A stretch of DNA of 64,000 nt from IMGVR_UViG_3300022744_000022:144487-208486, one strand, 5' to 3'; numbered from the stretch's first letter, positions 4,046 through 64,000 are shown. Program-made: numbers and translations. Notes: generated by a model not told the origin, from the letters alone.

Positions 4046-4069
4046 CCCCTGTACTACACCGAACGGACT

Positions 4070-4624
4070 ATGAAAGACCTCCGGACAACCGAATTTGTGC
4101 GCGCCTGGGGCGTCAAGGATGTGCCCACGGCGTCAGTCTCCCACGGGGCTGTACGTCCAGGCAGTTACCCGGCGTTCGCCTTGCTGGGCTGGGTGGAGCA
4201 GCGGAAAGCGGGCTGGCCCGTCGTGGGGCTCCGCCTGACCTTGCTCCAGAACGAGCTAGACGAGCCTGCTGGCGGGCTCACGATGGGCCTACCGCTCACG
4301 CCAAAGAGCGAGCGGCACGTCTGCTGCTTCTTGCAGGACCTAGGCTGGGATGGCCGCGTGTGGCCGTACAAGGACCATGGGTGGCCCGAGGGTACGCCCG
4401 ATGAGGACGGCTTGCTACTCCTACTCAAGGCATCCAAGCTCGGGGCCACCCTGACGTTCCCCTCGGACCCCGAGAAGGGTACCCCGACAGTCAGGATCCC
4501 AGTGCTGCAACGAACCGGGACCTTCTCGGTGGCACCCTTCGGCGAAGAAATCGTGCCCCGGTACCTCGATGCTCTCAGGACCCTTGCGGCAAACCCCACA
4601 CCATTCAAATCGGATTGGGCATGA
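4070..4624 (+). CDS. Hypothetical protein
   Basis: 184-aa ORF, ATGA-coupled to the NADAR gene. Confidence 0.55.
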   Translation: MKDLRTTEFVRAWGVKDVPTASVSHGAVRPGSYPAFALLGWVEQRKAGWPVVGLRLTLLQNELDEPAGGLTMGLPLTPKSERHVCCFLQDLGWDGRVWPYKDHGWPEGTPDEDGLLLLLKASKLGATLTFPSDPEKGTPTVRIPVLQRTGTFSVAPFGEEIVPRYLDALRTLAANPTPFKSDWA

Positions 4625-5127
4625 CCATCAGCTTCTATGGGGAGACCAACGAGCGGTACAGTTGGCTCTCGAACTTCCACGTGGCGATCTTCACACTCCA
4701 AGGGCACCAATGGGCTTCGACGGAACACTTCTACCAAGCCATGAAGTCTGAGGACCCCGAGGTTCAGCTCCAGATCAGGAGCGCCGCGACCCCGGGACAG
4801 GCTAAGCGGTTGGGTTCCAAGTGTGAACGGCGTGCTGATTGGGAAGAACCCGTAGGTACCCCTGCGTTGCACGACATTTTTCGAGATGACCGGGGGATCG
4901 TGGTGGAACTCGTGAAGGACCACTTCATGTACCAAGCGCTCACCGCGAAGTTCACGCAACGTCCCGAGCTACGTGAGGCGTTGATCTTGACGGGCACTGA
5001 GGAGCTGCAAGAAGCCTCACCCAAGGACTACTACTGGGGCGTGGGAGCCGACGGTTCGGGGCAGAACAAGCTCGGTCGAATGCTCCAGCTCGTGCGGGCT
5101 CAACTACCGAACCGCTGGTCACCGTAG
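4621..5127 (+). CDS. NADAR (YbiA-like) family N-glycosidase
   Basis: LSNF, TEHFYQAMK, AKRLG, AKFTQ, EASP.D.YWG, GQNKLGRML. Confidence 0.9.
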   Translation: MTISFYGETNERYSWLSNFHVAIFTLQGHQWASTEHFYQAMKSEDPEVQLQIRSAATPGQAKRLGSKCERRADWEEPVGTPALHDIFRDDRGIVVELVKDHFMYQALTAKFTQRPELREALILTGTEELQEASPKDYYWGVGADGSGQNKLGRMLQLVRAQLPNRWSP

Positions 5128-5394
5128 GCGTTGAGCCGTGAAACCGTTCAGGTAGACTTTCGCCTGAGCCCCGCCAAGTGTCCCGATTTGAATGTACGCC
5201 TTGCAGCAAGGGACCGCGACGATCTCTGCTTCGCGCAAAATCCCGCGAGACGCCACATCGATCAAAACCTCTACGGGTTGAGTGAACCCCGAGGGCCATC
5301 GGATGTAGAGGCGATCCCCGGCCTTGAGTGTTACCCCATCGAGGCTGTCATGGTACCCATCGTCCTGTTGGACAGTCACGACCTTGCTCGCCAA
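5119..5394 (-). CDS. Hypothetical protein
   Basis: 91-aa ORF in minus-strand block. Confidence 0.5.
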   Translation of the reverse strand: MASKVVTVQQDDGYHDSLDGVTLKAGDRLYIRWPSGFTQPVEVLIDVASRGILREAEIVAVPCCKAYIQIGTLGGAQAKVYLNGFTAQRLR

Positions 5395-5396
5395 AA

Positions 5397-5768
5397 CTAG
5401 CCCTCGTCATCATCTCGCCGCCGGTCTTTGACACGGGGCATTGGCGTAGTGCTACGGGGTCTGGGTTGTGGGGTTGGGATCCGTTGCGTGGGCTGGGACG
5501 GGGTGCGAGGCCGAACAACAGGCATCGGCCCGGCCGGTGTCGGGGTTCTGACTGCCTGCATACCACGTGGGGGTGTCAACGAGCGTACTGGGGGTTCGGT
5601 GGGGCGATCATGCTCGTGTTCACCCCCACGCTTGAACGCCTCCAGCAAACCCCGGGTGACGACGGACTCGACCTCAACCGACAGATGCTCCTGCGTGGTG
5701 CGCGCCTCTTGAGCCACCGCGTTGAGCACGATCTCGATCAGGTCTGCGATGTGACTGTGGGCAGTCAT
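5397..5768 (-). CDS. Pro/Thr-rich low-complexity protein
   Basis: Helical N-terminus, then repeated TP/PTP tail. Confidence 0.5.
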   Translation of the reverse strand: MTAHSHIADLIEIVLNAVAQEARTTQEHLSVEVESVVTRGLLEAFKRGGEHEHDRPTEPPVRSLTPPRGMQAVRTPTPAGPMPVVRPRTPSQPTQRIPTPQPRPRSTTPMPRVKDRRRDDDEG

Positions 5769-5858
5769 AGCCGGTCTTTCCCGGCGGTCAGGCACGGACT
5801 TGAGTCGTCGGTATGGCCGCTCGACTTACCAGACGCGACCGTGCCAGGGGCGTGCTGG

Positions 5859-7043
5859 TTACGCTTTGCCTCCGAACCGTGCTTTGGCTTGTTCTTCAAC
5901 TTGCGACTCCAACTCACGGGGATTCAGGGCTAACTCAGGGTTTTGCAGAAGCAGCGACCGGGCCATGGGTACAAGCGCTCCGCGATCTTGCCCCTTAAGC
6001 TGATACACCTCAAACAGACGCACCTGATCGATCTCCGGCTTCTTTAGCATCTCAAGAAAACGCTTCTCGAAGGCGGGATCATCTGCGTGGGACAACAGAA
6101 CTTCCCTGAGTCGCGCAAGCCCGTCCTGCGACAAGAATGACACAGGCGTGCGAACGGTCCACCCCAGATCCAGCAGGTCCAGTAGTAGGTGGATTTCTTG
6201 TTCGGGCAGCCCACGGCTGAGCGCTGTGGCGAACCCGGGTTCTTCCGCGAGCATTTCCTTGAGCACTTCTCCGAGCCCCAAGTCATGTAGCAGCTCTACT
6301 GAGCGGCGAGGCTGTGGCGACTCCAAGATGTCCTCGACAAGGATTTTGCGAACCGCATCCCAAGGCATCTGTTTAAGCTTGTGCGCGTTCTGCTGAATGC
6401 TCGTCCGCACATCGGGCGAGATTTTGAACCCGTACTTCGCCACGAACTTGACAGCACGAAGCATCCGGGTCGGGTCATCCGAGAACGTCTTGTCGGGGTC
6501 CACCGGCGTGGTGAGCAGGCGATCCTCAAGGTGCTGTCGGCCGTTGCCGAGAAGGTCCAGCACTTCGGCACGATCAGGTCCGTGCTCCAGGTCTAGAAGC
6601 CGCCAGAGTAGCGTGTTGAACGTGAACTCGCGACGCTGCAAGTCTTCTTGGATGGTCGCAGGTTCGACCATGTGCGGCTTGTAACCTTTGCCCGAGGGAT
6701 CGCCGTAGCTCTCTTTGCGAGCGTTGGCGATCTCCAGGACTTCACCCTTGAGATCATGCCCGTCAAGGACCCACGAGTCCGCGACGGTGAGGATCGCCAC
6801 CCCATATTGGTTAGTCGTCAAATTCGTGCGGGTCGGAATGATCCGTTGGAGCTGCTCCGCGAACCACGCAGAGTCCTTCCTACCCCCGAGAGCTACGGAA
6901 TCGACCACTACGTCCACGTCTTTAGGCGCAAGGCCCATCAAGTGGTTTCGTACTGCGCCACCGACGATGTAGACGTGTTCTCCAACGCCAAGGCGCTTGG
7001 TGGCCAAGGACAAGAAACGTAGGAGTGCCGTTATTTTTGTCAT
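5859..7043 (-). CDS. cca: Class II tRNA nucleotidyltransferase (CCA-adding/poly(A) polymerase family)
   Basis: YIVGGAVR..KDVDVV, EDLQRREFTFN, DDPTRMLRAVKF; no PAP-specific (L/I)VGRRF signature seen. Confidence 0.8.
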   Translation of the reverse strand: MTKITALLRFLSLATKRLGVGEHVYIVGGAVRNHLMGLAPKDVDVVVDSVALGGRKDSAWFAEQLQRIIPTRTNLTTNQYGVAILTVADSWVLDGHDLKGEVLEIANARKESYGDPSGKGYKPHMVEPATIQEDLQRREFTFNTLLWRLLDLEHGPDRAEVLDLLGNGRQHLEDRLLTTPVDPDKTFSDDPTRMLRAVKFVAKYGFKISPDVRTSIQQNAHKLKQMPWDAVRKILVEDILESPQPRRSVELLHDLGLGEVLKEMLAEEPGFATALSRGLPEQEIHLLLDLLDLGWTVRTPVSFLSQDGLARLREVLLSHADDPAFEKRFLEMLKKPEIDQVRLFEVYQLKGQDRGALVPMARSLLLQNPELALNPRELESQVEEQAKARFGGKA

Positions 7044-7978: not shown

Positions 7979-8114
7979 GTCTCCTTGTACTACACCGACA
8001 AGCCAAGGGCTAGGGGCAAACGGGCAAGAAACGATTCCCTGGACGCCACAGGACGATCCGGTGTAAAGCAGAAACAGGGAACCCATCGCTAGCTGTGGGT
8101 GAGGTGCGTACAGA

Positions 8115-8923: not shown

Positions 8924-8955
8924 TCCCGTACGCACGCCCGGTGTACTGGCCCGGG

Positions 8956-13736: not shown

Positions 13737-13901
13737 TGTCAGCTCTCCTTCGCGCTAGAACGCGCTTTCGTTTTCAGTTCGCTTCGTTCGCATTGGCGGG
13801 GGTTACCCCTCGCCAACAACCCCCCGTACACCAACGAAATGCGAATCTCGGACGAAAACGACCAAGCCCGTACGAATTCGGAAAGCCTTTGTACCAGCCC
13901 T

Positions 13902-14745: not shown

Positions 14746-14786
14746 TTGACGTTCTGCGGTCATCCGGTGTAATAGTGGACGGTGTA
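14746..14786 (+). promoter_or_regulatory. Putative promoter TTGACGTT-N12-GGTGTAAT plus a second GGTGTA
   Basis: sigma70-like TTGACG in the slot where other copies have CTAGAG. Confidence 0.6.
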
Positions 14787-17281: not shown

Positions 17282-17301
17282 GATGGACCAGATTACACCA
17301 G

Positions 17302-18564: not shown

Positions 18565-18590
18565 TACACCGGGGCTTGGGAAAACTCTAG
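18565..18590 (-). promoter_or_regulatory. Bipartite motif CTAGAGTT-N12-GGTGTA
   Basis: Reverse complement ctagagtt ttcccaagcccc ggtgta. Confidence 0.7.
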
Positions 18591-18610
18591 AAACGGGTTA
18601 CGCTTCTCAG

Positions 18611-18895
18611 GTGAAAACCTTACGCGAACGCCTTCAAGACTGGCACGATTGCGATGTTGCCGAATATGAACTCGGCGTAACTCTTGGGCTTTGGCCAGAA
18701 TGGGGCGGCGGGCCTCCTGGGGAAGACCCTTGGCATGGGCACAAAGGCGTCTTTTGGACCGCCAACCCCCTGGGGACCATGCTTCACGAGACCTTGGTGA
18801 GCCTGACTACACTCGGGATGCTGGAATCGAGGGAAGACGGGTTGAGCTTCCGGTGGAACCCTGCTTGGGACTCGAATTCGTTGAAGGGTGCCTAG
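18611..18895 (+). CDS. Hypothetical protein
   Basis: ORF from GTG 18611 (KTLRERLQDW...FRWNP). Confidence 0.55.
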   Translation: MKTLRERLQDWHDCDVAEYELGVTLGLWPEWGGGPPGEDPWHGHKGVFWTANPLGTMLHETLVSLTTLGMLESREDGLSFRWNPAWDSNSLKGA

Positions 18896-18917
18896 AGTTT
18901 CTCTGCTCTCCGGTGTA
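18892..18917 (+). promoter_or_regulatory. Bipartite motif CTAGAGTT-N12-GGTGTA
   Basis: ctagagtt tctctgctctcc ggtgta; ATG 8 nt downstream. Confidence 0.7.
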
Positions 18918-18925
18918 GTACCAAC

Positions 18926-22465: not shown

Positions 22466-22524
22466 AGACAAGACTACACCAAAAGCGCTTGGATCTGGTG
22501 CTGCCGTGCGCTACAGAGCACAGA

Positions 22525-22696: not shown

Positions 22697-23248
22697 ATGG
22701 GCCACCCCGCAGGTAGCTTCTGTTCCCTTTGTCTCAAATCTGAGTCAGAGGTCCCCCGCTTGATTGTGAGCGGCACGATGGCAGCGGTTTGCACCGAGTG
22801 CATTCAGCTCTGCAACGAGATTTTGGAGGGGGACGACGAGCCTTTCACAGAGGAACCCCCGCCCCGCTACGTGGGTGGCGAGAGACCCCCTGTGCTCCCC
22901 GATACGCTCTCGATCGAGCTGTTCTACCACGCCACCGAGGTGATGCTGAACACGTTGGTGCTCTCGGGAGAACCCCAGCCCTATAGTACGGTGGCCCCCA
23001 TCGTGGGCTACCACCACCGGGACCGGAACTTCTATCGCATGCTCGGGCGGTCCCTACGTGAGGACCACGCCGCTGGACGCCCCCTCAGGGCCTCCATGGT
23101 CATCAACAAGGCTCTGGGGATGCCTGGGCAGGCCTACTTCATGGTCTGCCGTGAGCTGGGCCTGGAAGTCCCCAAGGGCGGTGAAGCGGCCTTCTGGACT
23201 GCCCAGCTCGACCGCCTCGCCCTAGAGTTTTCCGAAGTCCAAGTGTAG
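22697..23248 (+). CDS. ClpX-type C4 zinc-finger domain protein
   Basis: FCSLC.KSESEV.RLI......VCTECIQLCNEIL; no AAA+ domain. Confidence 0.7.
   Translation: MGHPAGSFCSLCLKSESEVPRLIVSGTMAAVCTECIQLCNEILEGDDEPFTEEPPPRYVGGERPPVLPDTLSIELFYHATEVMLNTLVLSGEPQPYSTVAPIVGYHHRDRNFYRMLGRSLREDHAAGRPLRASMVINKALGMPGQAYFMVCRELGLEVPKGGEAAFWTAQLDRLALEFSEVQV
23222..23247 (+). promoter_or_regulatory. Bipartite motif CTAGAGTT-N12-AGTGTA
   Basis: ATG 23257 is 9 nt downstream. Confidence 0.7.
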
Positions 23249-23256
23249 TACCCTCC

Positions 23257-23475: not shown

Positions 23476-23511
23476 GTGCGGATTTAGGGCGGCGGCGGTG
23501 TAGCCTAAAGG

Positions 23512-23923: not shown

Positions 23924-23949
23924 CTAGAGTTCTACCCTTCCCATGTGTA
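23924..23949 (+). promoter_or_regulatory. Bipartite motif CTAGAGTT-N12-TGTGTA
   Basis: Upstream of the RNA ligase gene, which also has a GGAGAGG SD. Confidence 0.65.
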
Positions 23950-23970
23950 GTACCGGGAGAGGTTACGGCC

Positions 23971-24643: not shown

Positions 24644-24669
24644 CTAGAGTTTAGCCTCTCTCCGGTGTA
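24644..24669 (+). promoter_or_regulatory. Bipartite motif CTAGAGTT-N12-GGTGTA inside an inverted repeat
   Basis: ATG 24679 is 9 nt downstream; ACACCGGAGAG...CTCTCCGGTGT stem. Confidence 0.7.
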
Positions 24670-24678
24670 GTAGTAATC

Positions 24679-27460: not shown

Positions 27461-27479
27461 TCTGTAGAGTACACCGGGT

Positions 27480-29957: not shown

Positions 29958-30047
29958 GGCTCTTATCTACACCGGCTGGCTCTGTTGAAAAAGGCTCTTG
30001 ACGCCCCACTAGGTCTTCTGTCAGTCTCCTGCCTGTAGTGGGCTCAG

Positions 30048-35245: not shown

Positions 35246-35446
35246 GGTTTGCCCTTACACCGTCGCAGCCACTGATCGACCCAGAGTGTCCACCGTGTCA
35301 GGCGCGAGAGATCCCCGTGGGCTTGCAGCCACTTGGCATTCTCGACGTGGTACACCCACACCCAGGGCAACCAGATCGTGAAGAAAAAAGCCACGACGCC
35401 CAGGCAACCAAGCAGGATAAGGGCACCGCCGAACGCTTCCATCAAC

Positions 35447-35632: not shown

Positions 35633-35656
35633 CCCCTGCACTACACCAACCCGTAA

Positions 35657-37094: not shown

Positions 37095-37131
37095 TACACC
37101 GAAAGCTAGAAGTTTTCTGCCAGTTGGTGTA
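37095..37131. promoter_or_regulatory. Back-to-back divergent GGTGTA elements
   Basis: TACACC 37095-37100; CTAGAAGT-N12-GGTGTA 37106-37131. Confidence 0.6.
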
Positions 37132-38432: not shown

Positions 38433-39036
38433 GCTCTTGCGCTACACCATCGGCCATGGCCTGCGCTTGGAAGAAAGCCCGCTTCTTAGCACAAGAGGTG
38501 CCTTCCAAGGGACATGTAGGTCCCGTTCGCTTAGCCCAATTACAATTTGCGCACAAAGTCTGAAAGCCTGGGGGAAATTTCTGCGCCACCAACCAAGAAA
38601 AAATCTGCGTGACTTTCTTACGGTGCTCTCTACCCCCACCGGCTACATGATCAATTTGCAGTAACCTCTCTTCTGGCTCTCCACAACAAGCACAAGCCTT
38701 CCCGTAATGTGCAAAGCATGCTAAACGGTCACGTTCGTAACGAGCTGTGGCCCAACGTCGAGCAGCAAATCGGTGATCCGCGTAATACCTGTTGTTGTAG
38801 TCAAAACACCTAGGGCATTTCCGATACCCCTCTTTGACTGGACGCCCGCACTCGCAAATCCCGCGATCCCGTAGTTTCTTCTTGCGGTTAGCCCGGTATT
38901 CATTCTGGACCAGATTACAAGGGTCACAATGATTCTTGGATACGCCCGGCTGAAATGGCTGGCGGCACTTCATACAGAGCCCCGCCTCTTTGAAGCGTTT
39001 TCTACGTGCCTTCTCTGCTTCAGATGCGGCTGACAT
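38395..39036 (-). CDS. Cys-rich HNH-like endonuclease
   Basis: CxxC repeats, [27 protein letters not shown]; visibly more AT-rich. Confidence 0.7.
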
Positions 39037-39586: not shown

Positions 39587-39603
39587 TACACCAAGCCGGT
39601 GTA
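39587..39603. promoter_or_regulatory. Divergent pair of GGTGTA elements
   Basis: TACACC-aagcc-GGTGTA; starts 9 nt (39577) and 10 nt (39614) away. Confidence 0.65.
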
Positions 39604-40036: not shown

Positions 40037-40058
40037 GACGCCTGGTGTATAGAGCGCC

Positions 40059-40439: not shown

Positions 40440-40537
40440 AAACAAGCCTTGCGCCCTTCTCGGTCGGTGTAGTAGAACCGGGTGTCCTTGAATCGGTGTA
40501 GTAAGGGGACCCGGACTACCCGGCGAGAAAGAGTCGA

Positions 40538-42282: not shown

Positions 42283-42306
42283 ACCTCAGGAAAGAAGGCT
42301 ATTGTT

Positions 42307-44142: not shown

Positions 44143-44151
44143 AATAGCCCC

Positions 44152-44931: not shown

Positions 44932-44933
44932 TC

Positions 44934-45878: not shown

Positions 45879-45887
45879 GAGTAAATT

Positions 45888-46898
45888 ATGCACACCTTCA
45901 CCGTTGGCACCGAGAAGATGGCCGAGTGGTTCCTTCAGTCGCTCACGGAGGGGCACCGCTACGGTCCTCAACCCTTCGTTAAAGCGCTGGAGGGGTCGAG
46001 TATCTTGAGTGAGCCGACGGGACCGCTCTTGGGCACGACGGCTCGCAATGCCTTCTACTGGGGGCTGACGACGGCGTTCAGCCAACACGTGCCGCTTCGG
46101 ATCTCTCCCGACGCGGTGTGGCTGACGATCTTGAACGGGCTTACGCAGCACATCGACGAGAACCCCGAGGGGCTCCGGCACCACTTCGTGGAGCATGCGG
46201 GTAAGGAAACCTTGCAGGTTTCGGTCGAAGGCTCGCGGTGGGCCGAGCAAGGCGTGCAGCTCATGTCGGCGGCGTTGAAAGAGCGCCTTGGCAAGCGTCA
46301 CGACCTGATCGTGTCGTCGTTTTCGACAACGGCGGACGTGGATCGTGTTGCCTCGGAGATCATGCTCATGGGGGCGATGAAGCACTACTTCGAGTATCGT
46401 ATGATGCTCTGCTGCGGCTTGACCAACGTGACGATCTTGGGCGAGCCCGCCGACTGGGAGAACATCAAAGTTCGGCTCGGGGCAATGAGCGAGTTCGATC
46501 TCAAGTGGTGGACCGATCACTTGATCCCGATCGTGGACCAATTCAAGTCCGCCTGTGAGGGCAACCCAGACGTGGACTTTTGGAAGCGTCTGTACGTTCG
46601 CGAAGGCTACGGCTCGGGCGGCCAGCATGGTTTCACGGGGTGGCTGACGGCGTTCTACCCGTACTTGCAGGCTGCTCGCGGGGCCCGCGAGCGCAACCCG
46701 AAGGTCAACTGGGCTGCGGCTGGCCGTGTGGATGCGGACGACCTTCCTTCAGGGCTGGCGTTTGCTCCAGTGACCGTCGTATACCCAGACGGCTCGGAGC
46801 ACCCTCACAAGTTCTACGGGGGCGTCGTGGGCTGTACGTTCGAGGAAGGGGCCATTCGGCCGATCTCAGGCTGGTCAGCGCAAGAGCAACCAGCGTAG
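45888..46898 (+). CDS. DUF4419-like protein
   Basis: AFSQHVPLRISPDAVWLTI, FSTT, LMGAMKHYFEY....CG...VT..G...DW. Confidence 0.8.
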   Translation: MHTFTVGTEKMAEWFLQSLTEGHRYGPQPFVKALEGSSILSEPTGPLLGTTARNAFYWGLTTAFSQHVPLRISPDAVWLTILNGLTQHIDENPEGLRHHFVEHAGKETLQVSVEGSRWAEQGVQLMSAALKERLGKRHDLIVSSFSTTADVDRVASEIMLMGAMKHYFEYRMMLCCGLTNVTILGEPADWENIKVRLGAMSEFDLKWWTDHLIPIVDQFKSACEGNPDVDFWKRLYVREGYGSGGQHGFTGWLTAFYPYLQAARGARERNPKVNWAAAGRVDADDLPSGLAFAPVTVVYPDGSEHPHKFYGGVVGCTFEEGAIRPISGWSAQEQPA

Positions 46899-47823: not shown

Positions 47824-48115
47824 GCCCTACTGTTACACCGGGCTCATCTTCTTTCAAGTGATCCCAGAGCGTCCTGAGGCTACGAGCAGGGGGCTCCAGC
47901 AATTTGGACGGTTCGACCGGGGATTCTAACTTGTACTCAGGGGGCGAGATCAGTGCCCCCTGTACAGGCGGGGTGGTGGTCGCGACCAAGTACGTGATGG
48001 TACCCCGGGAGTCCATCAAGCAGAGGCGGCCCAGCTCATCTAGGAACATGGAAGCGTACCCCCTAGGCGGGGTCTGAACGCTACTCGTTGAGGCACGTCG
48101 GAAGCGTAGCGCCAT
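47777..48115 (-). CDS. Small protein with RTLWDHLKEDE tag; paralog of 38244-38432
   Basis: MFLDELGRLCLMDSRGTITYL; GGTGTA 10 nt before ATG. Confidence 0.65.
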   Translation of the reverse strand: MALRFRRASTSSVQTPPRGYASMFLDELGRLCLMDSRGTITYLVATTTPPVQGALISPPEYKLESPVEPSKLLEPPARSLRTLWDHLKEDEPGVTVGRGNSTAKDSGHGSAD

Positions 48116-48134
48116 ACCCGAGGCCTACACCGCA

Positions 48135-48437: not shown

Positions 48438-48470
48438 GGGGTACTATTACACCGAATCAGGACACGGCGT

Positions 48471-50993: not shown

Positions 50994-51024
50994 GGCTTCT
51001 ACTACACCGAAAACCGGGATCGAT

Positions 51025-51525
51025 TCAAGAGTCGTTCAATTTGTCCCACAGGGAAGTGGGCGGCGGTTCTTCCCGGGGCTCATCGAACATCGCCTCATCG
51101 CTCAACTGGACCAGCACCGGGGCGTTCCGCAGGGGGCACCAATCGGGAGTTCCGCTCTGAGGTACCGGCCGTTCCGCCAACCTGGTGCATCTCTGGATAG
51201 AGCAGAACGGGCAGCTCTGGCACCCGTCCACCGACTGGGATCCGACTTGCAGGGTCCTCAGGGACGGTTCTTCGGTGTCCCAGCACGCCATGCAGGCCGA
51301 ACGCATCCGCCCATCCGCAGAGATACTCGCGGAGAACCGTTCTCCACAGGACACGCAAGCGTGTGTCCACACGGGGGTGTCGTCTTCCTCAGGTGCCGCC
51401 ATGGGTTGAACGTAGTCTTCAAGGTGAAGCGGTTCCATCGCGTACACACGGCAGTCCGAGCACTCGCCCCTTCTCAGACGCAGCTCATCTTCGACTTCAA
51501 CACCGCAGCCGGTACAAGTGGGCAC
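51025..51525 (-). CDS. Cys-rich protein with C-terminal TSLWDKLNDS tag
   Basis: Multiple CxxC, PDWCPL; GGTGTA 9 nt before GTG. Confidence 0.65.
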   Translation of the reverse strand: MPTCTGCGVEVEDELRLRRGECSDCRVYAMEPLHLEDYVQPMAAPEEDDTPVWTHACVSCGERFSASISADGRMRSACMACWDTEEPSLRTLQVGSQSVDGCQSCPFCSIQRCTRLAERPVPQSGTPDWCPLRNAPVLVQLSDEAMFDEPREEPPPTSLWDKLNDS

Positions 51526-51628
51526 CCGGAAGCCTACACCACCCGAAGGTAGCTAATCTTGATACCCCTGTGAATCCACCTATGCCCGCAGCTCTACAGA
51601 AGGCCCTTTCGCCTCCCGTGGAGCGTTC

Positions 51629-54600: not shown

Positions 54601-55384
54601 GGCAGGTGACAACTCCGACCCTGCACTCAACCCTTTCGCCAATCAACTCACCTCGGGCAACCTGTTCCTGATCTCAGGTAACGGTGCCCCCAATGCCGCA
54701 GGCGCTGGCGGTGCTGCGGGTTTCTACGCCGTACAGGGCGGCACTGGCGGTAACGGAACCTCCGGCAACAACGGTGGCGCTGGCGGCCTGGGCATCGTGG
54801 GCGGAGGCCAAGGCGGCACCTCGGACTCTGCCACTGGAGGCGCTGGCGGCATGTCAGCAATCAGTGGCGGTCTTGGTGGAACCAGTGGAGGCACCGGAGG
54901 TACGGGCGGCGATGTTGCCTTGGAAGGCGGCAATGGTGGATCTGGTGCAAACGCTGGTCGCGTCCTCATCGGCACCAACCAACCTCTCCTTGCTGCGTTC
55001 GGTTCTAGAACGCGAACCATCGAGATGGGCAACACGACGCACTACCCGCCGATCACACAGGTGGGCTCTGTGCGTCAGCCCAAGGCAACCTTAACGCCTG
55101 GCGCAAACATCGACGTAAATCTCGCGCAAGTTACCAACGCAGAAGTTACGCTCGATCAAAACAGCACGCTCGACTTCAGCAATCTGGCAAACGGCGTTCG
55201 CGGGTCCATCGTCGTGAAGCAAGACGGCACGGGTGGCTGGACCCTCTCGAATGGCACAAACATGAAGACGCCAGGCGGGACCGCTCCAGCGATCAGCACG
55301 GCTGCTAGTAGTGTCAGTGTGCTCGACTACTACTGCGATGGCACAGACGTGTTCGTGACGCTTCGTGGGGCAAACTTCTCGTAG
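51629..55384 (+). CDS. Tail fibre / adhesin-like protein with YadA-head-like ~14-aa repeats and Gly-rich region
   Basis: GQVLTAT....WQ; dozens of NTAVG.xAL..NT.G repeats; GGxGGxGG stretches. Confidence 0.75.
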   Translation: MATRYTQVGPTPSPAAGGASELATTTNPVVISGASAPSVGQVLTATSATAANWQSPGGGSLTGQTQGATQYNVALGVAALTALTSGNFNTAIGSSALDVLTSGSDNVAVGYNALGANVTGGENVAIGNSALLGFNQTPGVGQNVAVGHQALSASMSGSSNTAIGYRALQVSTASNLTAVGAGALDANTSGTGNTAVGSDALGANSTTSRNTAVGASALAATNGDDNTAVGYNALTANNSGSNKNTAVGSTALDANTSGTNNTAVGYNALGANTSNGNNTAVGSDALAVSGGTANTAIGRQALLSLTIGGHNTALGAGAGAGLTTTDHNVAIGSNTSNAVGGGDTVAVGYQALILNTASGSVAIGSQALDANTSGLRNTAVGTEALGANTTSANSTAVGYNALLLSTGSQNTAVGSQALDANTSGLSNTAVGFDALGLNSSGGANTAVGNEALRSVTTANDGTAVGWRALYLTTGSDNTAVGYNAGSQLSTGTNNTALGSGTFATSVASSGSFNTAIGSLAMAAHTTGSSNTSVGVQALNTTTGSQNVAVGRSALAVPLTANDNVAVGYQALTVNTAAGSVAVGARALDANTTGTGNTAVGTDALGANTTAADSTAVGYNALLVSTGAGNTAVGSAALDANTTGTDNVALGRNAGGAVTTGANNTLIGTGTGSTLTTGSDNLVIGRNQDVPTAGTSNYLNIGGAITGETSTGNGQIQFRLTTTAGITASTTQTQGNGALTSRVNQVSVVANANDVVTLPAAAAGLEVLVTNNGANTLQVFPASGDNLGAGVNTSTTLAAGDTVRFTAYDATTWTPQTEGGGGNFVPTDTGSAGTAGENAAQLAWTSQDGGSNTGGAAGNGGTLLRQGGNGGLGDTGGGAGGDAVTYGGNGGNSSTSGNGGNGGDADLIAGTGGVALGGAGNGGDGGRAYISPGNGGNSTSGNGGNGGFTQIYSGSGGSGPTGDGDAGYIQIIGGNGGTYQGGGGGGARISIKAGDNSDPALNPFANQLTSGNLFLISGNGAPNAAGAGGAAGFYAVQGGTGGNGTSGNNGGAGGLGIVGGGQGGTSDSATGGAGGMSAISGGLGGTSGGTGGTGGDVALEGGNGGSGANAGRVLIGTNQPLLAAFGSRTRTIEMGNTTHYPPITQVGSVRQPKATLTPGANIDVNLAQVTNAEVTLDQNSTLDFSNLANGVRGSIVVKQDGTGGWTLSNGTNMKTPGGTAPAISTAASSVSVLDYYCDGTDVFVTLRGANFS

Positions 55385-56510: not shown

Positions 56511-56645
56511 GCCACAGTCTACACCGAAACAGCATCGGTGTGCAGCAGCCCCGTGAGACGCTGCACTTCTTGCCGTAAAGCATCTCGGTCTGCACGGCAC
56601 AGGTCAGCGCAGCCTTTGGCGCAAACCTTTCCGGTCGTCGGGCAA

Positions 56646-57787: not shown

Positions 57788-58051
57788 TTACACCGTAGGT
57801 GCGTTGTCCCGACGCATCGCATCGATCCCCCGCAGGCCCATCACCCACAGAGCACCTTGAACGAAGCCGAGCCAACGCATCGCCTTGTCGAGATCCTGAG
57901 TCAAGAAGACCTCGATCTCACCGCACATCCAGAGCAAGTGCCGGGCTCGCTCAAGCGGCTCCAGGGCTTCGATGTTGCGGACCGGCCCCAAGTCCGGGTA
58001 AGCGGTCCGGAGCGTCTCTCGGGCCGCCTCGATGGCTCGTAGGGCCTGCAT
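57788..58051 (-). CDS. Hypothetical protein, paralog of 34955-35245
   Basis: HLLWM...KAMRWLGFVQGAL. Confidence 0.65.
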   Translation of the reverse strand: MQALRAIEAARETLRTAYPDLGPVRNIEALEPLERARHLLWMCGEIEVFLTQDLDKAMRWLGFVQGALWVMGLRGIDAMRRDNAPTV

Positions 58052-58368: not shown

Positions 58369-58387
58369 GGTGCTTAGTACACCGCCG

Positions 58388-60690: not shown

Positions 60691-61404
60691 TCAACCCCTC
60701 ACCAGGTCACGGATCTCGGGAGTCAACCCGTCCACCCTGATCCCCTCAGCCTCCAGGTAGTCCAAGAAGCCTTGGCGGCTATCCTGCGGGCCCAGGTGAA
60801 CGTCGTACCCGAAGCCGTGCCCGTTGGTAGCGTAGAAGCAATGCAGGCCATCGGGGGCCCTCACCACCGCCCAGGGATCGGAGATGTCCCAACCCATGTG
60901 CCAGATCTTGCCTTGAGCGATCACTTCTGACCCGGGCATCGAAGCCAGCAAGTCATCCGTGGTCTTAAGCCGCTCGGGCTTACCCACGAGCTTGTGCTCC
61001 GAGAGTTGAACCGGGATCCCCAGTTCATCGGTCAGCTCTTGGCACGCCGCTTCCAACGCAGCCGGGTCGAAAGGGAACTTGATTCCCTCCAAGAGCTTGT
61101 GCGCGTAGGCGTCACTGCCGCCCAGGTAGCCTTGATACCACGTCCACCGACCCGAGATTTTCGTGAACGTGCGGTCGCCCACATAATGAGCACACACGTA
61201 GACCGAGGGTTCCCACGTCGAAGTGGCGGATCCAGCGTTCAAGCTGCCCAACACCTTGACCTGGAACGCCTTGAGCCGTTCGTCGCAGATCTTCTGGACT
61301 TGACGGCCCAGGCGCTCGATCAACTTCTGGTTGGCCTCAGCTCGGGCCATCAGCTCACGCTGATCCTTGACCAAAGCCTCCAAATTGTCTCTGACGTTGG
61401 TCAC
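60691..61404 (-). CDS. Hypothetical protein
   Basis: ORF, likely GTGA-coupled start. Confidence 0.6.
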   Translation of the reverse strand: MTNVRDNLEALVKDQRELMARAEANQKLIERLGRQVQKICDERLKAFQVKVLGSLNAGSATSTWEPSVYVCAHYVGDRTFTKISGRWTWYQGYLGGSDAYAHKLLEGIKFPFDPAALEAACQELTDELGIPVQLSEHKLVGKPERLKTTDDLLASMPGSEVIAQGKIWHMGWDISDPWAVVRAPDGLHCFYATNGHGFGYDVHLGPQDSRQGFLDYLEAEGIRVDGLTPEIRDLVRG

Positions 61405-61592
61405 GGTCCGTAGCCTTCCGCCTGATCCGCACACTCATCGCACTGGTACCCCAGCGCCTTGTCCTTGGGCGTCAGCCGATTGGGCTGCTTGCAGGTAGGG
61501 CAGGGGAGGTTCCGAGGGTTGCTCTTGGAAGCCGCCCGTAGGGCCGACTTACCCCCTGGATCCGCGAAGTCCATGTCGTTGTCGTCGTCCAT
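61401..61592 (-). CDS. Small Zn-ribbon protein
   Basis: PCPTC..PNRLT..D...GYQCDECAD. Confidence 0.65.
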   Translation of the reverse strand: MDDDNDMDFADPGGKSALRAASKSNPRNLPCPTCKQPNRLTPKDKALGYQCDECADQAEGYGP

Positions 61593-61600
61593 ACCGCTAA

Positions 61601-61626
61601 CACACCTGGGATCTGGAGAACTCTAG
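61601..61626 (-). promoter_or_regulatory. Bipartite motif CTAGAGTT-N12-GGTGTG
   Basis: ATG 61592 is 8 nt downstream. Confidence 0.65.
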
Positions 61627-61815
61627 TCTTTCCACACCGACGGAGAAATTCGCGGTCCACGTTGCGCTCTCTTACCCTTGGGGGACCCCACGATTGCATT
61701 CAGCACGGCCCGTATCGACCTGATCTCTTGCGCTGTCAACTCACCACAACGAAGCCGAAGCGCATCAGCCGAGAGCCCGTGCCACTCCCGGAGACGTTTC
61801 AAAGTAGCGGCGTCA

Positions 61816-62355
61816 TCAGGCTTCTGGGGCATCGACCTCGACCTCGATCTCGGATGTGGATTCCGTAGCGGACAGGACACCCGGTTGGGCACCCTTCAAC
61901 TCTTGAATCTGGTGTGCCAGCTTGGCAGCACGCTCGACCAACTGTTGTTGGTCTGCTTCCAACGCGGCCACCAACGCCTCAGGGGACGTGCGGAGCTGCT
62001 TGGCCCGCAACACCGCCTTCGCCCCTGACTCGCACTTCTCGACCTGGAGAAAGTCATCAGTCTTCGCTGTTACCACCCCGTACCAGCGATCCCGCTTCTT
62101 GTTGCCGAAGCTGGTCGTGTAGTCGGCCGCAAACTCCACGGCGTCGAACAAACCCACCTGCTCCACCACGTATAGGCACTCGCCCTTGCCGCGATTCATG
62201 AACCGCCGCGACAACCCTCCGGGGGACGTGGGGTCGATATCGATCACAGCGAGCCAGTTAGACCCACGGTAATGCGACTCGTACACAGGGGCGTTCAAGA
62301 GTGCCCCGTTCGCGAGCGTACACTTCAAGACAACGGGTTGAGCTGGTTCAGTCAT
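61816..62355 (-). CDS. Hypothetical protein
   Basis: ATG 62355, GGTGTA 14 nt upstream. Confidence 0.6.
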   Translation of the reverse strand: MTEPAQPVVLKCTLANGALLNAPVYESHYRGSNWLAVIDIDPTSPGGLSRRFMNRGKGECLYVVEQVGLFDAVEFAADYTTSFGNKKRDRWYGVVTAKTDDFLQVEKCESGAKAVLRAKQLRTSPEALVAALEADQQQLVERAAKLAHQIQELKGAQPGVLSATESTSEIEVEVDAPEA

Positions 62356-62368: not shown

Positions 62369-62632
62369 TTACACCGGACGGCCAACAGGGTCAACGGCCC
62401 CGGGTGGGGGCGGTGGCGTCCCCGTCTGACGCACCGAGCCTTTGCGGACCCGATGAAGCAAGCAGTATCGAGTCTTGCCCGAGCGCCGAAACAAGGCCTT
62501 GCAGTCCGGATCCCCGCACTCGATCATCACAACCTTGGGCTTGCGGCACTCAAGACAGAGCTTACGGACCCCGTGCCCGGTCCAATCCCCACAGCCCTCG
62601 CACTTGCCTGACTTGAGATCGTGCGGCCTCAT
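62369..62632 (-). CDS. Cys-rich small protein
   Basis: CxxC pairs. Confidence 0.5.
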   Translation of the reverse strand: MRPHDLKSGKCEGCGDWTGHGVRKLCLECRKPKVVMIECGDPDCKALFRRSGKTRYCLLHRVRKGSVRQTGTPPPPPGAVDPVGRPV

Positions 62633-62985
62633 TTGCGAGGTATGTTCGGCCTCGGGTTCATGAGATCAGGAAGCTTCACCTCTTCCCCCTGCTTGAACGA
62701 GTCGGACCGCTCGCACTCCCGAAAGCACCACTTGTTCATCTGAGCGCCGTCCTGATCGGTGAGCGGCACCGCACTCGGCTTCATGTGCCCGCCCTCAGAG
62801 AGCCCTACGGTCTCACCTGGCCCCGGCGCTGTACCCAGCTTGTCGTCAGCCAGATACACGTAATCGTCGAGATCCTCCGACAACATTGTCTTGGGCCGCC
62901 CGTTGTGCCCCCACGCTTTGTCGCAACGCCCGTCACAGGCCATCGTGAGCTGCTGGCCGTACCCCAGGATCTGTTTGGTTGGCAT
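62629..62985 (-). CDS. Hypothetical protein
   Basis: ACDG.C.KAWG...NKWC.RECER; GGTGTA 10 nt before ATG. Confidence 0.65.
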   Translation of the reverse strand: MPTKQILGYGQQLTMACDGRCDKAWGHNGRPKTMLSEDLDDYVYLADDKLGTAPGPGETVGLSEGGHMKPSAVPLTDQDGAQMNKWCFRECERSDSFKQGEEVKLPDLMNPRPNIPRK

Positions 62986-63041
62986 CGAGACAGGTTACAC
63001 CGGCCCCGAGGACTTTGCCTAGCCCGTCGTCACTTGGGGGT

Positions 63042-63323
63042 TCATGGAGCGGGTTCGTCCAACCGCCGACCCAGGTTCCGTTCCTTGGCCTCGACGTACC
63101 GTGACCTGTTGTGCATGATCATGCGGGTCAAGATGCGTTCAGCGATCCCCGCATCGCCAGCCGCGATGCGGGCGGTCACTTCACGTTCGAGCGTCTCGAA
63201 CTCCGCCGTCGTGAGGATGTGTGGATCGTAGGCGCGAAACCGGATGACAGCTTCGAGCTTCTCGGGTTTCTTGTCGTCGGTCATGGCTCTTCTTCTTTTG
63301 GGAGAGGGTAGCGGACCCGCCAC
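63042..63323 (-). CDS. Hypothetical protein
   Basis: ORF after bipartite motif. Confidence 0.5.
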   Translation of the reverse strand: MAGPLPSPKRRRAMTDDKKPEKLEAVIRFRAYDPHILTTAEFETLEREVTARIAAGDAGIAERILTRMIMHNRSRYVEAKERNLGRRLDEPAP

Positions 63324-63335
63324 GCTGTCGGGTAC

Positions 63336-63361
63336 TACACTTGAGGCCCAGGGAACTCTAG
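63336..63361 (-). promoter_or_regulatory. Bipartite motif CTAGAGTT-N12-AGTGTA
   Basis: Reverse complement ctagagtt ccctgggcctca agtgta. Confidence 0.65.
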
Positions 63362-63570
63362 ACTTCCGGGTGGCACTCAGGATCGTGCTCGCAAGTCAGG
63401 CAGTTGCCGCCCACCCCGTCGTCTCGATAGAGCCTACAGACGGGCTGGATCACCCCATGCTTCCAATGCATGGGGTTGCACCGGCACTTGCCAGGTCGGA
63501 CAGCGGGCTCAAAAGCGTGAGGGTGCTCCGACTCCAGGATTCCACAGTGTTTGCAGGGGAGGTCAGGCAC
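63358..63570 (-). CDS. Cys/His-rich small protein
   Basis: CKHC..H, CRC, CLTC.H. Confidence 0.5.
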   Translation of the reverse strand: MPDLPCKHCGILESEHPHAFEPAVRPGKCRCNPMHWKHGVIQPVCRLYRDDGVGGNCLTCEHDPECHPEV

Positions 63571-63838
63571 GGTTCTTCTCCTTGCGAAGCAACCTGATCG
63601 CCTCCCAGACCCACGCCAAGTTGCCCGTGACCAACACGATGCCAGCAGTGAAGCTCACCCACTGCCCCAGGCTCGGGTAGTACCAGAGGTTCCAAAGACC
63701 CCAAAGCGAATAGAACCCGTAGACGGGCCAGTAGACGCCCCGGATGGCCCGGTCCCTGCGGAGCTGCACGTAGTTCTTCCAGGCCGCTACAGCGCCGCCA
63801 GCCTCGAACAAACCGTTGATCAGGTCAGGTATCTGCAC
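63563..63838 (-). CDS. PQ-loop/SemiSWEET-like three-helix membrane protein
   Basis: Three hydrophobic helices with QL.RD....GV loop; GGTGTA 10 nt before GTG. Confidence 0.55.
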   Translation of the reverse strand: MQIPDLINGLFEAGGAVAAWKNYVQLRRDRAIRGVYWPVYGFYSLWGLWNLWYYPSLGQWVSFTAGIVLVTGNLAWVWEAIRLLRKEKNRA

Positions 63839-64000
63839 CCGCAGTCGCTACACCAACTCACGGCATGCACCACAAACTGTGCGAGATTGCCCCCATCCCG
63901 CAACGGGAGCACGAGGCCTCGCTCGAATACTCTGTCTCGTACCCCGGCCCGTCCCACGAGTGCTCGCACGGACCACCCTTGGCACACTCGCATTTGCACT

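What the first reader, a model, noticed from the sequence alone, without database searches (positions are those of the whole stretch)
4055..63854. Genome-wide GGTGTA element 9-10 nt before start codons: a probable phage promoter giving near-leaderless mRNAs
Seen: GGTGTA (TACACC on the + strand for minus genes) precedes the first gene of most blocks. Gap of 9 nt at 4055, 22475, 23497, 24664, 27470, 35642, 39587, 40044, 51003, 51535, 56520, 57789, 58378. Gap of 10 nt at 8940, 29968, 39598, 47834, 48126, 48448, 62996, 63849. Gap of 8 nt at 18565, 18912. The 8-10-nt cases mostly lack an SD, whereas some longer-gap cases have one (7991 AGGAG, 23944 GGAGAGG). Inference: GGTG-TAnnnn is an extended -10-type element placing transcription start at or beside the start codon. 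Leaderless translation could sidestep host defences that attack the anti-SD or tRNAs. The spacing also corrects about ten ORF-track starts.
Basis: partly seen in the sequence, partly recalled or inferred. Interest (0 to 1): 0.8.

Follow-up and report, generated by a model that had tools for sequence, protein, structure and literature searches.

The report
Phage promoter core beside start codons
A huge uncultivated freshwater phage (at least 291 kb) carries the exact hexamer GGTGTA 8-10 bases before about forty start codons; it most likely marks phage promoters that yield messenger RNAs with almost no leader, a strategy already shown in Thermus phages but written here in a different sequence.

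Summary
All 23 coordinates check. GGTGTA occurs 49 times in the window against about 17 expected. In 25 of the 49 sites, an ATG or GTG that opens an ORF of at least 50 codons lies 8-10 nt downstream, against 3.6% for the other permutations of the hexamer. The rule holds over 159 kb of the same genome and in related metagenomic phages.

The motif behaves as a promoter element, not a ribosome-binding site:
- A subclass is bipartite, CTAGAGTTY-N11-RGTGTRGTA. The 11-nt spacing was found in all 29 instances, while the distance to ATG runs from 8 to 46 nt.
- A few sites have TTGAC(G/C) 13-14 nt upstream.
- Sites with long leaders carry their own Shine-Dalgarno sequence; sites at 8-13 nt do not.
- The motif is rare before overlapping, coupled genes (2 of 26).
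- It is depleted inside genes on both strands.
- Tandem copies and back-to-back copies in a 36-bp divergent gap occur.

No transcript data could be found, so the start sites are inferred. The element is not a canonical extended -10: the TG abuts the TA, and there is no conserved T at -7. No sigma factor or RNA polymerase was recognised in about two thirds of the genome. The host is unknown.

Closest precedent: the leaderless promoters of Thermus phages YS40 and Lalka27a. Verdict: a new variant of a known kind.

The parts
18565..18598 (-). Class I bipartite promoter-like site: CTAGAGTTT-N11-GGTGTAGTA, ATG 18556 at gap 8
   Evidence: The orthologue in L003/L029 keeps both blocks and the gap while the spacer varies.
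18892..18920 (+). Class I site, divergent partner of the previous one; ATG 18926 at gap 8
23222..23250 (+). Class I site with AGTGTAGTA; ATG 23257 at gap 9
23924..23952 (+). Class I site with TGTGTAGTA and a 21-nt gap that holds GGGAGAGG (an SD) before ATG 23971 (RNA ligase gene)
24644..24672 (+). Class I site; ATG 24679 at gap 9
61598..61626 (-). Class I variant CTAGAGTTC-N11-GGTGTGTTA; ATG 61592 at gap 8
63333..63361 (-). Class I variant CTAGAGTTC-N11-AGTGTAGTA; GTG 63323 at gap 12
14746..14786 (+). TTGACG-N14-GGTGTAATAG followed 9 nt later by a second GGTGTAGTAG: tandem copies with a 35-50 nt leader (GAAGGGA before GTG 14822)
   Evidence: TTGACG, its 14-nt distance and both GGTGTA copies are kept in relative L003.
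62370..62394 (-). TTGACC-N13-GGTGTAATAGT; ATG 62355 at gap 14. The only sigma-70-like hit of the consensus scan.
51003..51028 (-). TTGAAT-N14-GGTGTAGTAG; ATG 50993 at gap 9
47834..47857 (-). TTGAAA-N12-GGTGTA; GTG 47823 at gap 10. It lies in the 3' end of the upstream ORF.
40466..40500 (+). Tandem GGTGTAGTA copies 66 and 37 nt before ATG 40538, with a purine-rich leader GAGAAAGAG
13827..13832 (-). GGTGTA 90 nt before ATG 13736. The leader begins with a G/C hairpin and ends with AAGGAG. The 30 nt upstream of the motif are identical in L003 apart from one C/T difference.
39587..39603 (.). Back-to-back class II copies (TACACC aagcc GGTGTA) inside the 36-bp gap between divergent starts 39577 (-, gap 9) and 39614 (+, gap 10)
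   Evidence: The + copy and its 10-nt gap are kept in L029 while the spacer differs.
4055..4060 (-). Class II; GTG 4045 at gap 9
8940..8945 (+). Class II; ATG 8956 at gap 10. The database gene call starts there.
22475..22480 (-). Class II; GTG 22465 at gap 9 (weak 75-codon ORF)
23497..23502 (+). Class II; ATG 23512 at gap 9
27470..27475 (-). Class II; GTG 27460 at gap 9. The L029 orthologue keeps the motif and the gap with an unrelated spacer and an ATG.
29968..29973 (-). Class II; ATG 29957 at gap 10
35256..35261 (-). Class II copy inside the 3' end of the upstream ORF; ATG 35245 at gap 10 (ATGA overlap). Conserved in L029.
35642..35647 (-). Class II; ATG 35632 at gap 9
37095..37131 (.). Divergent pair: 37095 (-) with ATG 37083 at gap 11, and 37126 (+) with ATG 37146 at gap 14
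38443..38448 (-). Class II; ATG 38432 at gap 10
40044..40049 (+). Class II; ATG 40059 at gap 9. Conserved in L029.
48126..48131 (-). Class II; ATG 48115 at gap 10
48448..48453 (-). Class II; ATG 48437 at gap 10
51535..51540 (-). Class II; GTG 51525 at gap 9
56520..56525 (-). Class II; GTG 56510 at gap 9
57789..57794 (-). Class II; ATG 57779 at gap 9 (GH64 glucanase gene). The TAA stop of the upstream ORF overlaps the motif.
58378..58383 (-). Class II; ATG 58368 at gap 9
62996..63001 (-). Class II; ATG 62985 at gap 10
63849..63854 (-). Class II; GTG 63838 at gap 10
7991..7996 (-). GGTGTAGTAC with ATG 7978 at gap 12. The AGGAG lies only 2 nt from the ATG.
17294..17299 (-). GGTGTA with ATG 17281 at gap 12

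Best explanation
GGTGTA is the shared core, in the -10 region, of this phage's promoters. An RNA polymerase holoenzyme reads it on double-stranded DNA. The holoenzyme is most simply the host core enzyme with a sigma-family factor whose specificity is host-unusual or phage-imposed.

Three promoter flavours share the core:
- The core alone, yGGTGTA (class II).
- The core with a sigma-70-like TTGAC(G/C) 13-14 nt upstream.
- The core inside a rigid bipartite element, CTAGAGTTY-N11-RGTGTRGTA (class I), with a layout like an activator box at about -30 plus a -10 element.

At roughly 40% of sites the core lies 8-10 nt before ATG or GTG, so RNA synthesis should begin at the start codon or within about 3 nt of it. 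That gives leaderless or near-leaderless mRNAs, which are translated without a Shine-Dalgarno sequence. At other sites the same core lies 20-90 nt upstream and the leader then carries its own SD. Many short genes in co-directional arrays have their own copy, which predicts nested transcripts rather than long SD-driven operons.

Shown: the motif, its spacing statistics, its architecture and its conservation. Inferred: promoter function, start-site position, leaderless translation, and the identity of the polymerase or factor.
For: 1. Position. The gap is sharply peaked at 9-10 nt (8 nt in class I). This holds in relatives too and agrees with independent gene calls.

2. Bipartite class. In all 29 distinct instances recovered with a search pattern that fixed the spacing at 11, the distance from block 2 to ATG varies (8, 9, 11, 12, 21, over 40 nt). 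GTA after the hexamer is 28-29 of 29 conserved, although the search pattern did not require it.

3. -35-like elements. TTGACG, TTGACC, TTGAAT and TTGAAA lie 12-14 nt before GGTGTA, which is 16-18 bp before the TA. TTGACG-N14-GGTGTA is conserved in relative L003 with a diverged spacer.

4. Leader rule. Gaps of 13 nt or less have no usable SD. Gaps of 20 nt or more carry one: GGGAGAGG at 23944, AGGAGG before contig position 76633, GGAG before the DUF932-family gene (ATG at contig position 121131), AAGGAG before 13736.

5. Gene context. The motif precedes 2 of 26 overlapping genes but 11 of 21 genes with a 16-60 nt gap (Fisher p = 0.0009). Two opposed copies fill a 36-bp divergent gap.

6. Tandem copies lie 35-66 nt upstream of two well-scoring genes.

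7. Depletion inside genes on both strands. Sense: 11 observed against 19-23 expected. Antisense: 11 against 25-28 (Poisson p = 0.001). An RNA signal would not be selected against on the antisense strand.

8. Canonical TTGACA/TATAAT promoters are not enriched (0 and 1 found, 3.3-3.6 expected), and TANNNT shows no positional peak. No other promoter signal was detected.

9. Orthologous sites keep the motif and the gap length while the spacer sequence is replaced (27470, 39598).

10. Composition. Mild A/T enrichment in the 4-5 nt after TA, then a G/C-rich stretch up to the start codon.

11. Precedent. Most transcripts of Thermus phages YS40 and Lalka27a are leaderless, with the A or G of the start codon at the 5' end. 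They have a phage-specific -10 variant, dense promoters and few terminators (bioRxiv 10.64898/2026.04.20.719267). A -10 motif 6-7 bp before ORFs drives leaderless genes in Deinococcus-Thermus (PMC12340547).
Against: - No transcript evidence: no RNA run was listed.
- The sequence is not a standard -10. There is no conserved T at -7, the TG is directly adjacent to the TA, and all six bases are needed. That degree of exactness is more typical of a dedicated factor or of base pairing than of a housekeeping sigma.
- The register is unresolved. The 8-nt gap of class I leaves a 4-nt discriminator if TA is -12/-11.
- TAGAGT in block 1 itself fits TANNNT.
- A few copies do precede overlapping genes: 35256 (conserved in L029), 47834, and contig position 68250.
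- No sigma factor or RNA polymerase gene was recognised in contig 40,909-208,486 plus about 26 kb of the second contig (regex).
- The host, and hence its capacity for leaderless translation, is unknown.
- 22% of motif-linked starts are GTG. From my own knowledge, GTG is a poorer leaderless initiator than ATG in E. coli but is used in mycobacteria.
Confidence: 0.65

Rival explanations
1. GGUGUA is an RNA-level translation-initiation element: a non-Shine-Dalgarno ribosome-binding site, or the site of a phage-encoded initiation helper. It sits in a short leader 8-10 nt before the start codon. In class I the real -10 would be TAGAGT of block 1, which fits TANNNT. Transcription would start in the 11-nt spacer and give a leader of about 20 nt.
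For: - The position, 8-10 nt before the start codon, is RBS-like.
- All six bases are required, as expected for base pairing.
- Class II has no other conserved position upstream.
- TAGAGT fits TANNNT.
- A few copies lie inside the 3' end of an upstream gene before an overlapping start, and one of these is conserved in a relative.
- SD use is weak genome-wide, so some other initiation signal would be welcome.
Against: - Only GGUG can pair with the anti-SD tail (CACC). It would then sit 11-12 nt from the AUG, too far for that register, and the invariant UA would be unexplained (reasoning from the universal 16S 3' end).
- Block 2 recurs at exactly 11 nt from block 1, not at a fixed distance from the ATG, and long-leader copies have their own SD.
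- Tandem copies 35-66 nt upstream make no sense for an RBS.
- It is rare before coupled genes (2 of 26).
- It is depleted on the antisense strand inside genes.
- TTGAC elements sit at -35 distance from it.
- The 36-bp divergent gap leaves no room for separate promoters.
Confidence: 0.15
2. GGTGTA, and CTAGAGTTY as well, are binding sites of a phage DNA-binding regulator, an activator or repressor that overlaps core promoters. They would not be the element read by the polymerase or sigma factor itself.
For: - The short motif is exact and asymmetric.
- The genome encodes several HTH proteins, including a 296-aa protein with two winged-helix domains whose own gene carries the motif at gap 13.
- The class I layout resembles activator-dependent promoters such as T4 middle promoters (own knowledge).
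Against: - No other promoter-like signal was detected for such a regulator to act on.
- The fixed distance to the start codon is explained by start-site placement, not by regulator binding.
- The core occurs with three different upstream contexts.
Confidence: 0.12
3. GGUGUA marks an RNA processing site. A phage or host endoribonuclease would cut polycistronic transcripts there and release mRNAs with very short leaders.
For: - The motif lies between closely spaced co-directional genes (12 of 21 with 16-60 nt gaps).
- The phage carries many RNA-repair and RNA-modifying genes.
Against: - The motif occurs at divergent gene starts, where no upstream transcript exists (8 of 20), including a 36-bp gap.
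- It is linked at a fixed distance to upstream DNA blocks.
- It is depleted on the antisense strand.
- No conserved RNA structure was noted around class II sites, though this was not tested by folding.
Confidence: 0.05

Closest known systems
Leaderless promoters of Thermus phages phiYS40 and Lalka27a (bioRxiv 10.64898/2026.04.20.719267, which cites Sevostyanova et al. 2007)
   Same: Both have phage promoters placed so that the A or G of the start codon is the RNA 5' end. Both have a phage-specific variant of the -10 element in one temporal class (TAGGGT plus a conserved C at -25). Promoters are dense before collinear genes with few terminators. Opposed promoters sit in short divergent gaps.
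   Different: In the Thermus phages the -10 is a regular TANNNT, 6 nt from the start site, and it is experimentally mapped. Here the core is GGTGTA with no conserved T at -7, nothing is mapped, the host is unknown, and the phage is an unrelated genome of about 291 kb with 60% G+C.
-10 motif adjacent to ORFs in Deinococcus-Thermus (PMC12340547)
   Same: A short promoter element sits at a narrow, fixed distance (6-7 bp) before ORFs that lack an SD. A second gene set uses GGAG. Adding a -35 element at 17 bp strengthens the promoter.
   Different: That motif is TANNNT (most often TACACT) and belongs to the host. Here TANNNT shows no positional peak and the element is phage-lineage-specific.
Extended -10 (TGnTATAAT) sigma-70 promoters
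   Same: A conserved TG-containing block lies directly upstream of TA, and a -35 is dispensable at most sites.
   Different: The TG is one base closer to the TA, the GG before it is invariant, and the rest of the hexamer is not conserved.
T4 middle promoters (MotA box at -30 plus a -10) and the T4 late promoter TATAAATA read by gp55 (own knowledge)
   Same: Class I resembles a middle promoter: a 9-bp box centred near -30 at a rigid distance from a -10-region element. Class II resembles a late promoter: a single short, exact element and no -35.
   Different: No MotA, AsiA or gp55 homologue was looked for specifically or recognised. The sequences are unrelated. T4 transcripts have leaders with SDs.
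Start-associated sequences (SAS) of Cluster K mycobacteriophages (own knowledge)
   Same: A conserved short motif lies a few bases upstream of the start codons of a subset of phage genes.
   Different: SAS is 13 bp, contains an SD-like GGAG, and is thought to act in translation. GGTGTA has no SD and behaves like a DNA element.

Membership tests
Extended -10 sigma-70-type promoter | TG at -15/-14, separated by one base from the hexamer TAnnnT | tested here: not met
   In GGTGTA the TG abuts the TA. The base before GG is C or T.
Extended -10 sigma-70-type promoter | Conserved A at -11 and T at -7 of the hexamer | tested here: not met
   If TA is -12/-11, the A is invariant in class II, but the -7 position is A12 C10 G16 T14. 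If the hexamer is TGTAGT, -11 is G.
Extended -10 sigma-70-type promoter | Where a -35 hexamer is present, it lies 17 +/- 1 bp upstream | tested here: met
   TTGACG, TTGACC, TTGAAT and TTGAAA lie 16-18 bp before the TA at four window sites. One is conserved in L003.
Extended -10 sigma-70-type promoter | Transcription starts 6-8 nt downstream of the hexamer | not testable with these tools
   No RNA run was listed.
Leaderless-gene promoters (Deinococcus-Thermus and Thermus-phage type) | Promoter element at a narrow, fixed distance before the start codon, with no SD in between | tested here: met
   The gap is 9-10 nt in class II and 8 nt in class I. There is no SD at gaps of 13 nt or less.
Leaderless-gene promoters (Deinococcus-Thermus and Thermus-phage type) | Element sequence TANNNT | tested here: not met
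   No T at the sixth position. TANNNT has no positional peak before ORFs.
Leaderless-gene promoters (Deinococcus-Thermus and Thermus-phage type) | The mRNA 5' end is the A or G of the start codon | not testable with these tools
   No transcript data. 78% of motif-linked starts are ATG and 22% are GTG.
Shine-Dalgarno ribosome-binding site | Complementarity to the 16S 3' tail at 5-10 nt aligned spacing | tested here: not met
   Only GGUG can pair (with CACC), and it lies 11-12 nt from the AUG. The invariant UA cannot pair. This is reasoning from the conserved tail sequence; the host 16S is unknown.
Shine-Dalgarno ribosome-binding site | Present before internal, translationally coupled genes as much as before first genes | tested here: not met
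   2 of 26 overlapping genes against 11 of 21 genes with a 16-60 nt gap.
T4-type activator-dependent (middle) promoter | Activator box centred near -30 at a fixed distance from a -10 element | tested here: inconclusive
   The layout fits: CTAGAGTTY spans about -34 to -26 if the ATG is +1, and the spacing was 11 in all 29 instances recovered with a pattern that fixed it. The start site is unknown.
T4-type activator-dependent (middle) promoter | Phage-encoded activator and sigma-appropriation factor | not tested
   Only generic HTH proteins were seen. About one third of the genome was not examined.
Promoter of a phage-encoded RNA polymerase | A phage RNA polymerase gene in the genome | tested here: inconclusive
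   No RNA_pol Pfam family, and no NADFDGD or DxDGD motif in a plausible protein, in about 190 kb (regex). The 1,448-aa protein with DSDGD hits only a tail-fibre PHROG and no PDB sequence. The rest of the genome was not seen.

The most novel reading that the evidence does not exclude
A clade of uncultivated huge freshwater phages expresses much of its genome through a private promoter code: an exact GGTGTA core, alone or with a CTAGAGTTY box. A phage-encoded or phage-modified sigma-like factor reads this code. It systematically produces leaderless mRNAs, which makes phage gene expression largely independent of both host promoter specificity and Shine-Dalgarno-dependent initiation.
Probability: 0.3. 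Interest if true: 0.75.

Novelty: new variant of a known kind. Interest (0 to 1): 0.55.

Why it matters
If the reading is right, it has several practical consequences.
- Gene starts in this phage lineage can be set to the base from sequence alone. About ten starts in the window, and more elsewhere, are corrected.
- Transcription units can be predicted for a genome of about 291 kb that has no cultured host.
- A new -10-region specificity is defined that some sigma-like factor must read.
- Genome-scale leaderless expression, shown so far for Thermus phages, would extend to a very different huge phage.
- The motif gives a handle for finding the factor, and for host prediction if the host's own promoters share the core.
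- The exact hexamer is also a simple marker for recruiting further members of this phage clade from metagenomes.

Tried and rejected
- Transcript evidence. Two run searches gave one DNA run and no RNA run. Read laying was therefore not used, because DNA reads cannot show start sites.
- Close cultured relatives. None were found by megablast of 20 kb. The tail-fibre-like protein and the DNA polymerase A hit only distant phages of many hosts.
- Host from a host-like gene. The ABC ATPase found only 22-31% identical proteins from scattered phyla.
- Canonical sigma-70 promoters and intrinsic terminators are not enriched.
- TANNNT at 6-7 nt before ORFs shows no peak, and SD k-mers show only faint peaks.
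- Pyrimidine at -1 before the start codon as a start-site mark. C is frequent (52%) but not different from motif-less genes (p = 0.23), so this was dropped.
- tRNA genes and Rfam families in the window: none.
- Sigma factor or RNA polymerase. Pfam and PHROG scans covered about 55 proteins, the precomputed Pfam tables covered 168 kb plus 26 kb, and a regex searched for the polymerase metal-binding motif. Nothing convincing emerged.
- Literature search for GGTGTA as a phage promoter: only incidental primer hits.
- PhiKZ and AR9 giant phages were rejected as analogues. PhiKZ has no leaderless transcript, and AR9 UTRs are 26-491 nt.

Full report
**What the window is.** The window is the last 64 kb of IMG/VR contig IMGVR_UViG_3300022744_000022, which is JGI Ga0228700_1000016 (208,486 bp). 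Window position 1 is contig position 144,487. An ENA assembly holds the same sequence in a 291,219-bp contig. Its length and coordinates indicate that it joins the JGI contig to a second one, Ga0228700_1000112 of 82,756 bp. The object is therefore a phage genome of about 291 kb with 60% G+C from a freshwater metagenome. No close cultured relative exists in GenBank phages.

Recognisable genes in the window are accessory:
- an adenylosuccinate-synthetase-like protein,
- a kinase,
- a CCA-adding enzyme,
- NADAR,
- RtcB,
- an RNA ligase,
- an HD protein,
- a ClpX zinc-finger protein,
- an OmpA/ABC/DUF4419 cluster,
- a GH64 glucanase,
- a 1,251-aa tail-fibre-like protein.

There is no tRNA and no Rfam hit.

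**The observation.** Every coordinate and gap in the finding is correct. GGTGTA occurs 49 times against 17 +/- 4 expected. In 25 of the 49 sites, an ATG or GTG that opens an ORF of at least 50 codons follows at 8-10 nt, against 3.6% for the other 59 permutations of the same letters. Counting ATG, GTG and TTG, the gap histogram is 8:3, 9:13, 10:10, 11:2, 12:3. GGTGTA and its overlapping words are the most enriched k-mers upstream of genes. The only other enriched family is CTAGAGTT, and no Shine-Dalgarno word is enriched.

I walked the contig with eleven of the twelve look-ups and assembled 158.6 kb. It holds 106 sites, with gap 9 at 20 and gap 10 at 20. At least 14 gene starts called independently in the public collection coincide with the motif-linked codon. 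In about 120 kb of related contigs, 20 of 63 distinct sites have the 8-10 nt gap, against 3% for controls. All six bases matter: single-base variants are at background, except AGTGTA and, weakly, GGTGTG.

**Anatomy.** Aligning the sites shows only yGGTGTA conserved in the general class, here called class II. No other position from -40 to the start codon carries information. There is mild A/T enrichment in the 4-5 nt after TA, followed by a G/C-rich stretch.

A subclass, class I, is bipartite: CTAGAGTTY, exactly 11 nt, then RGTGTRGTA(cc). Seven copies are in the window. A pattern scan of metagenome contigs recovered the element in the second contig of this genome and in relatives from other samples. 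Across the 29 distinct instances:
- They were collected with a pattern that fixes the spacing at 11.
- The spacer sequence is free.
- GTA after the hexamer, which the search pattern did not require, is 28-29 of 29 conserved.
- The A of GGTGTA may be G in 8 of 29.

Four window sites have TTGACG, TTGACC, TTGAAT or TTGAAA 12-14 nt before GGTGTA, which is 16-18 bp before the TA. The consensus scan's only sigma-70-like hit in the window is one of these.

**Promoter or ribosome-binding site?** Seven lines of evidence favour a DNA-level promoter element.

1. In class I, block 2 recurs at the same 11 nt from block 1 and not at a fixed distance from the start codon. The distance to ATG is 8 (most often), 9, 11, 12, 21 or more than 40 nt.

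2. There is a clean leader rule. Sites 13 nt or less from the start have no usable SD. Sites 20 nt or more away carry one near the ATG. Examples are GGGAGAGG at 23944, AGGAGG before contig 76633, GGAG before the DUF932-family gene, and AAGGAG at the end of a 90-nt leader that begins with a hairpin at 13827.

3. TTGACG-N14-GGTGTA, followed by a second GGTGTA, is conserved in relative L003 although the spacers differ. Tandem copies also precede gene 40538.

4. The motif precedes 2 of 26 overlapping genes but 11 of 21 genes with a 16-60 nt gap (p = 0.0009). Two opposed copies fill the 36-bp gap between divergent starts 39577 and 39614.

5. Deep inside genes the hexamer is depleted on both strands. 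Sense is 11 against 19-23 expected; antisense is 11 against 25-28 (p = 0.001). Only a DNA signal predicts selection against the antisense orientation.

6. No alternative promoter signal was detected.

7. Orthologous sites keep the hexamer and the gap length while the spacer is replaced, for example ctctacaga against aaacccagg at 27470.

Against an SD-like role: only GGUG could pair with the anti-SD tail, it would be too far from the AUG, and the invariant UA would be unexplained.

**What remains open.** No RNA run was listed, so start sites and leaderless translation are inferred.

The register of the -10-like element is unresolved:
- With TA as -12/-11, the -35-like blocks sit at 16-18 bp and class II gaps give 5-6 nt discriminators, but the 8-nt gap of class I leaves only 4 nt.
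- With TGTAGT as the hexamer, the start codon falls at the canonical distance for class I, but -11 is G and the upstream blocks are 14-16 bp away.
- TAGAGT in block 1 itself fits TANNNT. This keeps alive a rival in which class I starts in the spacer and GGUGUA is a leader element.

A few copies do precede overlapping genes, and one of these is conserved.

No sigma factor or RNA polymerase was recognised in contig 40,909-208,486 plus about 26 kb of the second contig. About a third of the genome was not seen. The host could not be assigned. Bacterial features, such as the OmpA-like domain, the Amidase_2 family hit and the SD sequences in long leaders, argue for a bacterial host with a normal anti-SD.

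**Comparison with what is known.** The closest precedent is the transcription strategy of Thermus phages. For Lalka27a, and earlier YS40, most transcripts are leaderless with the A or G of the start codon at the 5' end. Late promoters have a phage-specific -10 (TAGGGT with a conserved C at -25). Promoters are dense before collinear genes, and opposed promoters sit in short divergent gaps. In Deinococcus-Thermus hosts, a TANNNT motif 6-7 bp before ORFs drives leaderless genes while a second gene set uses GGAG.

The present element works like these but is not a member by sequence: the TANNNT and TGn criteria are not met. Giant phages phiKZ and AR9 are not analogues, because phiKZ has no leaderless transcript and AR9 UTRs are 26-491 nt. 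The class I layout resembles T4 middle promoters and class II resembles T4 late promoters (own knowledge); no homologous factors were identified.

**Verdict.** This is a new variant of a known kind, of moderate interest.

Noticed in passing
whole window; L007, L008, L019, L022: The genome is larger than the IMG/VR contig. An ENA contig of 291,219 bp carries the same sequence. Its length and coordinates indicate that it joins Ga0228700_1000016 (208,486 bp) to Ga0228700_1000112 (82,756 bp).
   Followed up: partly
window 1-7043, 23971-24618, 30170-31588; L005-L007; L040: There is a dense set of RNA-repair and anti-defence-like genes: CCA-adding enzyme, RtcB, RNA ligase, NADAR, 2',5' RNA ligase/Acb1-like, Acb5 family, PTH2, a zeta-toxin-like kinase, NAMPT plus a Nudix/NrtR-like protein (NAD salvage), and a nucleoside deoxyribosyltransferase.
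   Followed up: no
window 37-1035 (full gene in L005:8685-10013): An adenylosuccinate-synthetase family protein falls in the PHROG labelled '2-aminooxy adenylosuccinate synthetase', which is PurZ-like. This raises the possibility of a modified adenine in the DNA. Not examined.
   Followed up: no
window 40538-46898: A bacterial-looking operon encodes a coiled-coil protein, a 354-aa protein, a 611-aa OmpA-domain protein, a permease-like protein, an ABC ATPase and DUF4419. Its internal genes use overlaps or GGAG/AGGAG, and only the first gene has upstream GGTGTA copies (in tandem).
   Followed up: partly
window 51629-55384: A 1,251-aa tail-fibre-like protein has flat G+C across codon positions (0.59/0.61/0.60), unlike other genes. 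It is 37-45% identical over part of its length to tail fibres of Pelagibacter, Methylophilales and Prochlorococcus phages.
   Followed up: no
window 13740-13832 (- strand): The 90-nt leader after the GGTGTA at 13827 begins with a G/C-rich hairpin (cgGGGGGTT...AACCCCCg). The 30 nt upstream of the motif are identical in relative L003 apart from one C/T difference.
   Followed up: partly
L045:9114-10004 (contig 60,929-61,819, - strand): A 296-aa protein with two winged-helix (MarR-like) domains has a gene that carries GGTGTA at gap 13. It is a candidate transcription factor.
   Followed up: partly
L019 (second contig of the genome): Eight class I elements lie in 11.5 kb, each before a small gene, several with GGTGTGGTA instead of GGTGTAGTA. 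This looks like a dedicated (early?) gene cluster.
   Followed up: partly
L043:179-2950: The DnaB-like helicase gene is interrupted by an intein with a LAGLIDADG domain.
   Followed up: no
window intergenic regions, e.g. 7045, 13760, 14135, 37106: CTAG is frequent in intergenic DNA, also outside class I elements (CTAGC, CTAGG). Not analysed further.
   Followed up: no
L046:13931-21000; L045:11997-16343: Three very large proteins (1,499, 856 and 1,448 aa) have no Pfam or PHROG family, apart from a weak tail-fibre hit for the 1,448-aa one. They are probably structural.
   Followed up: partly
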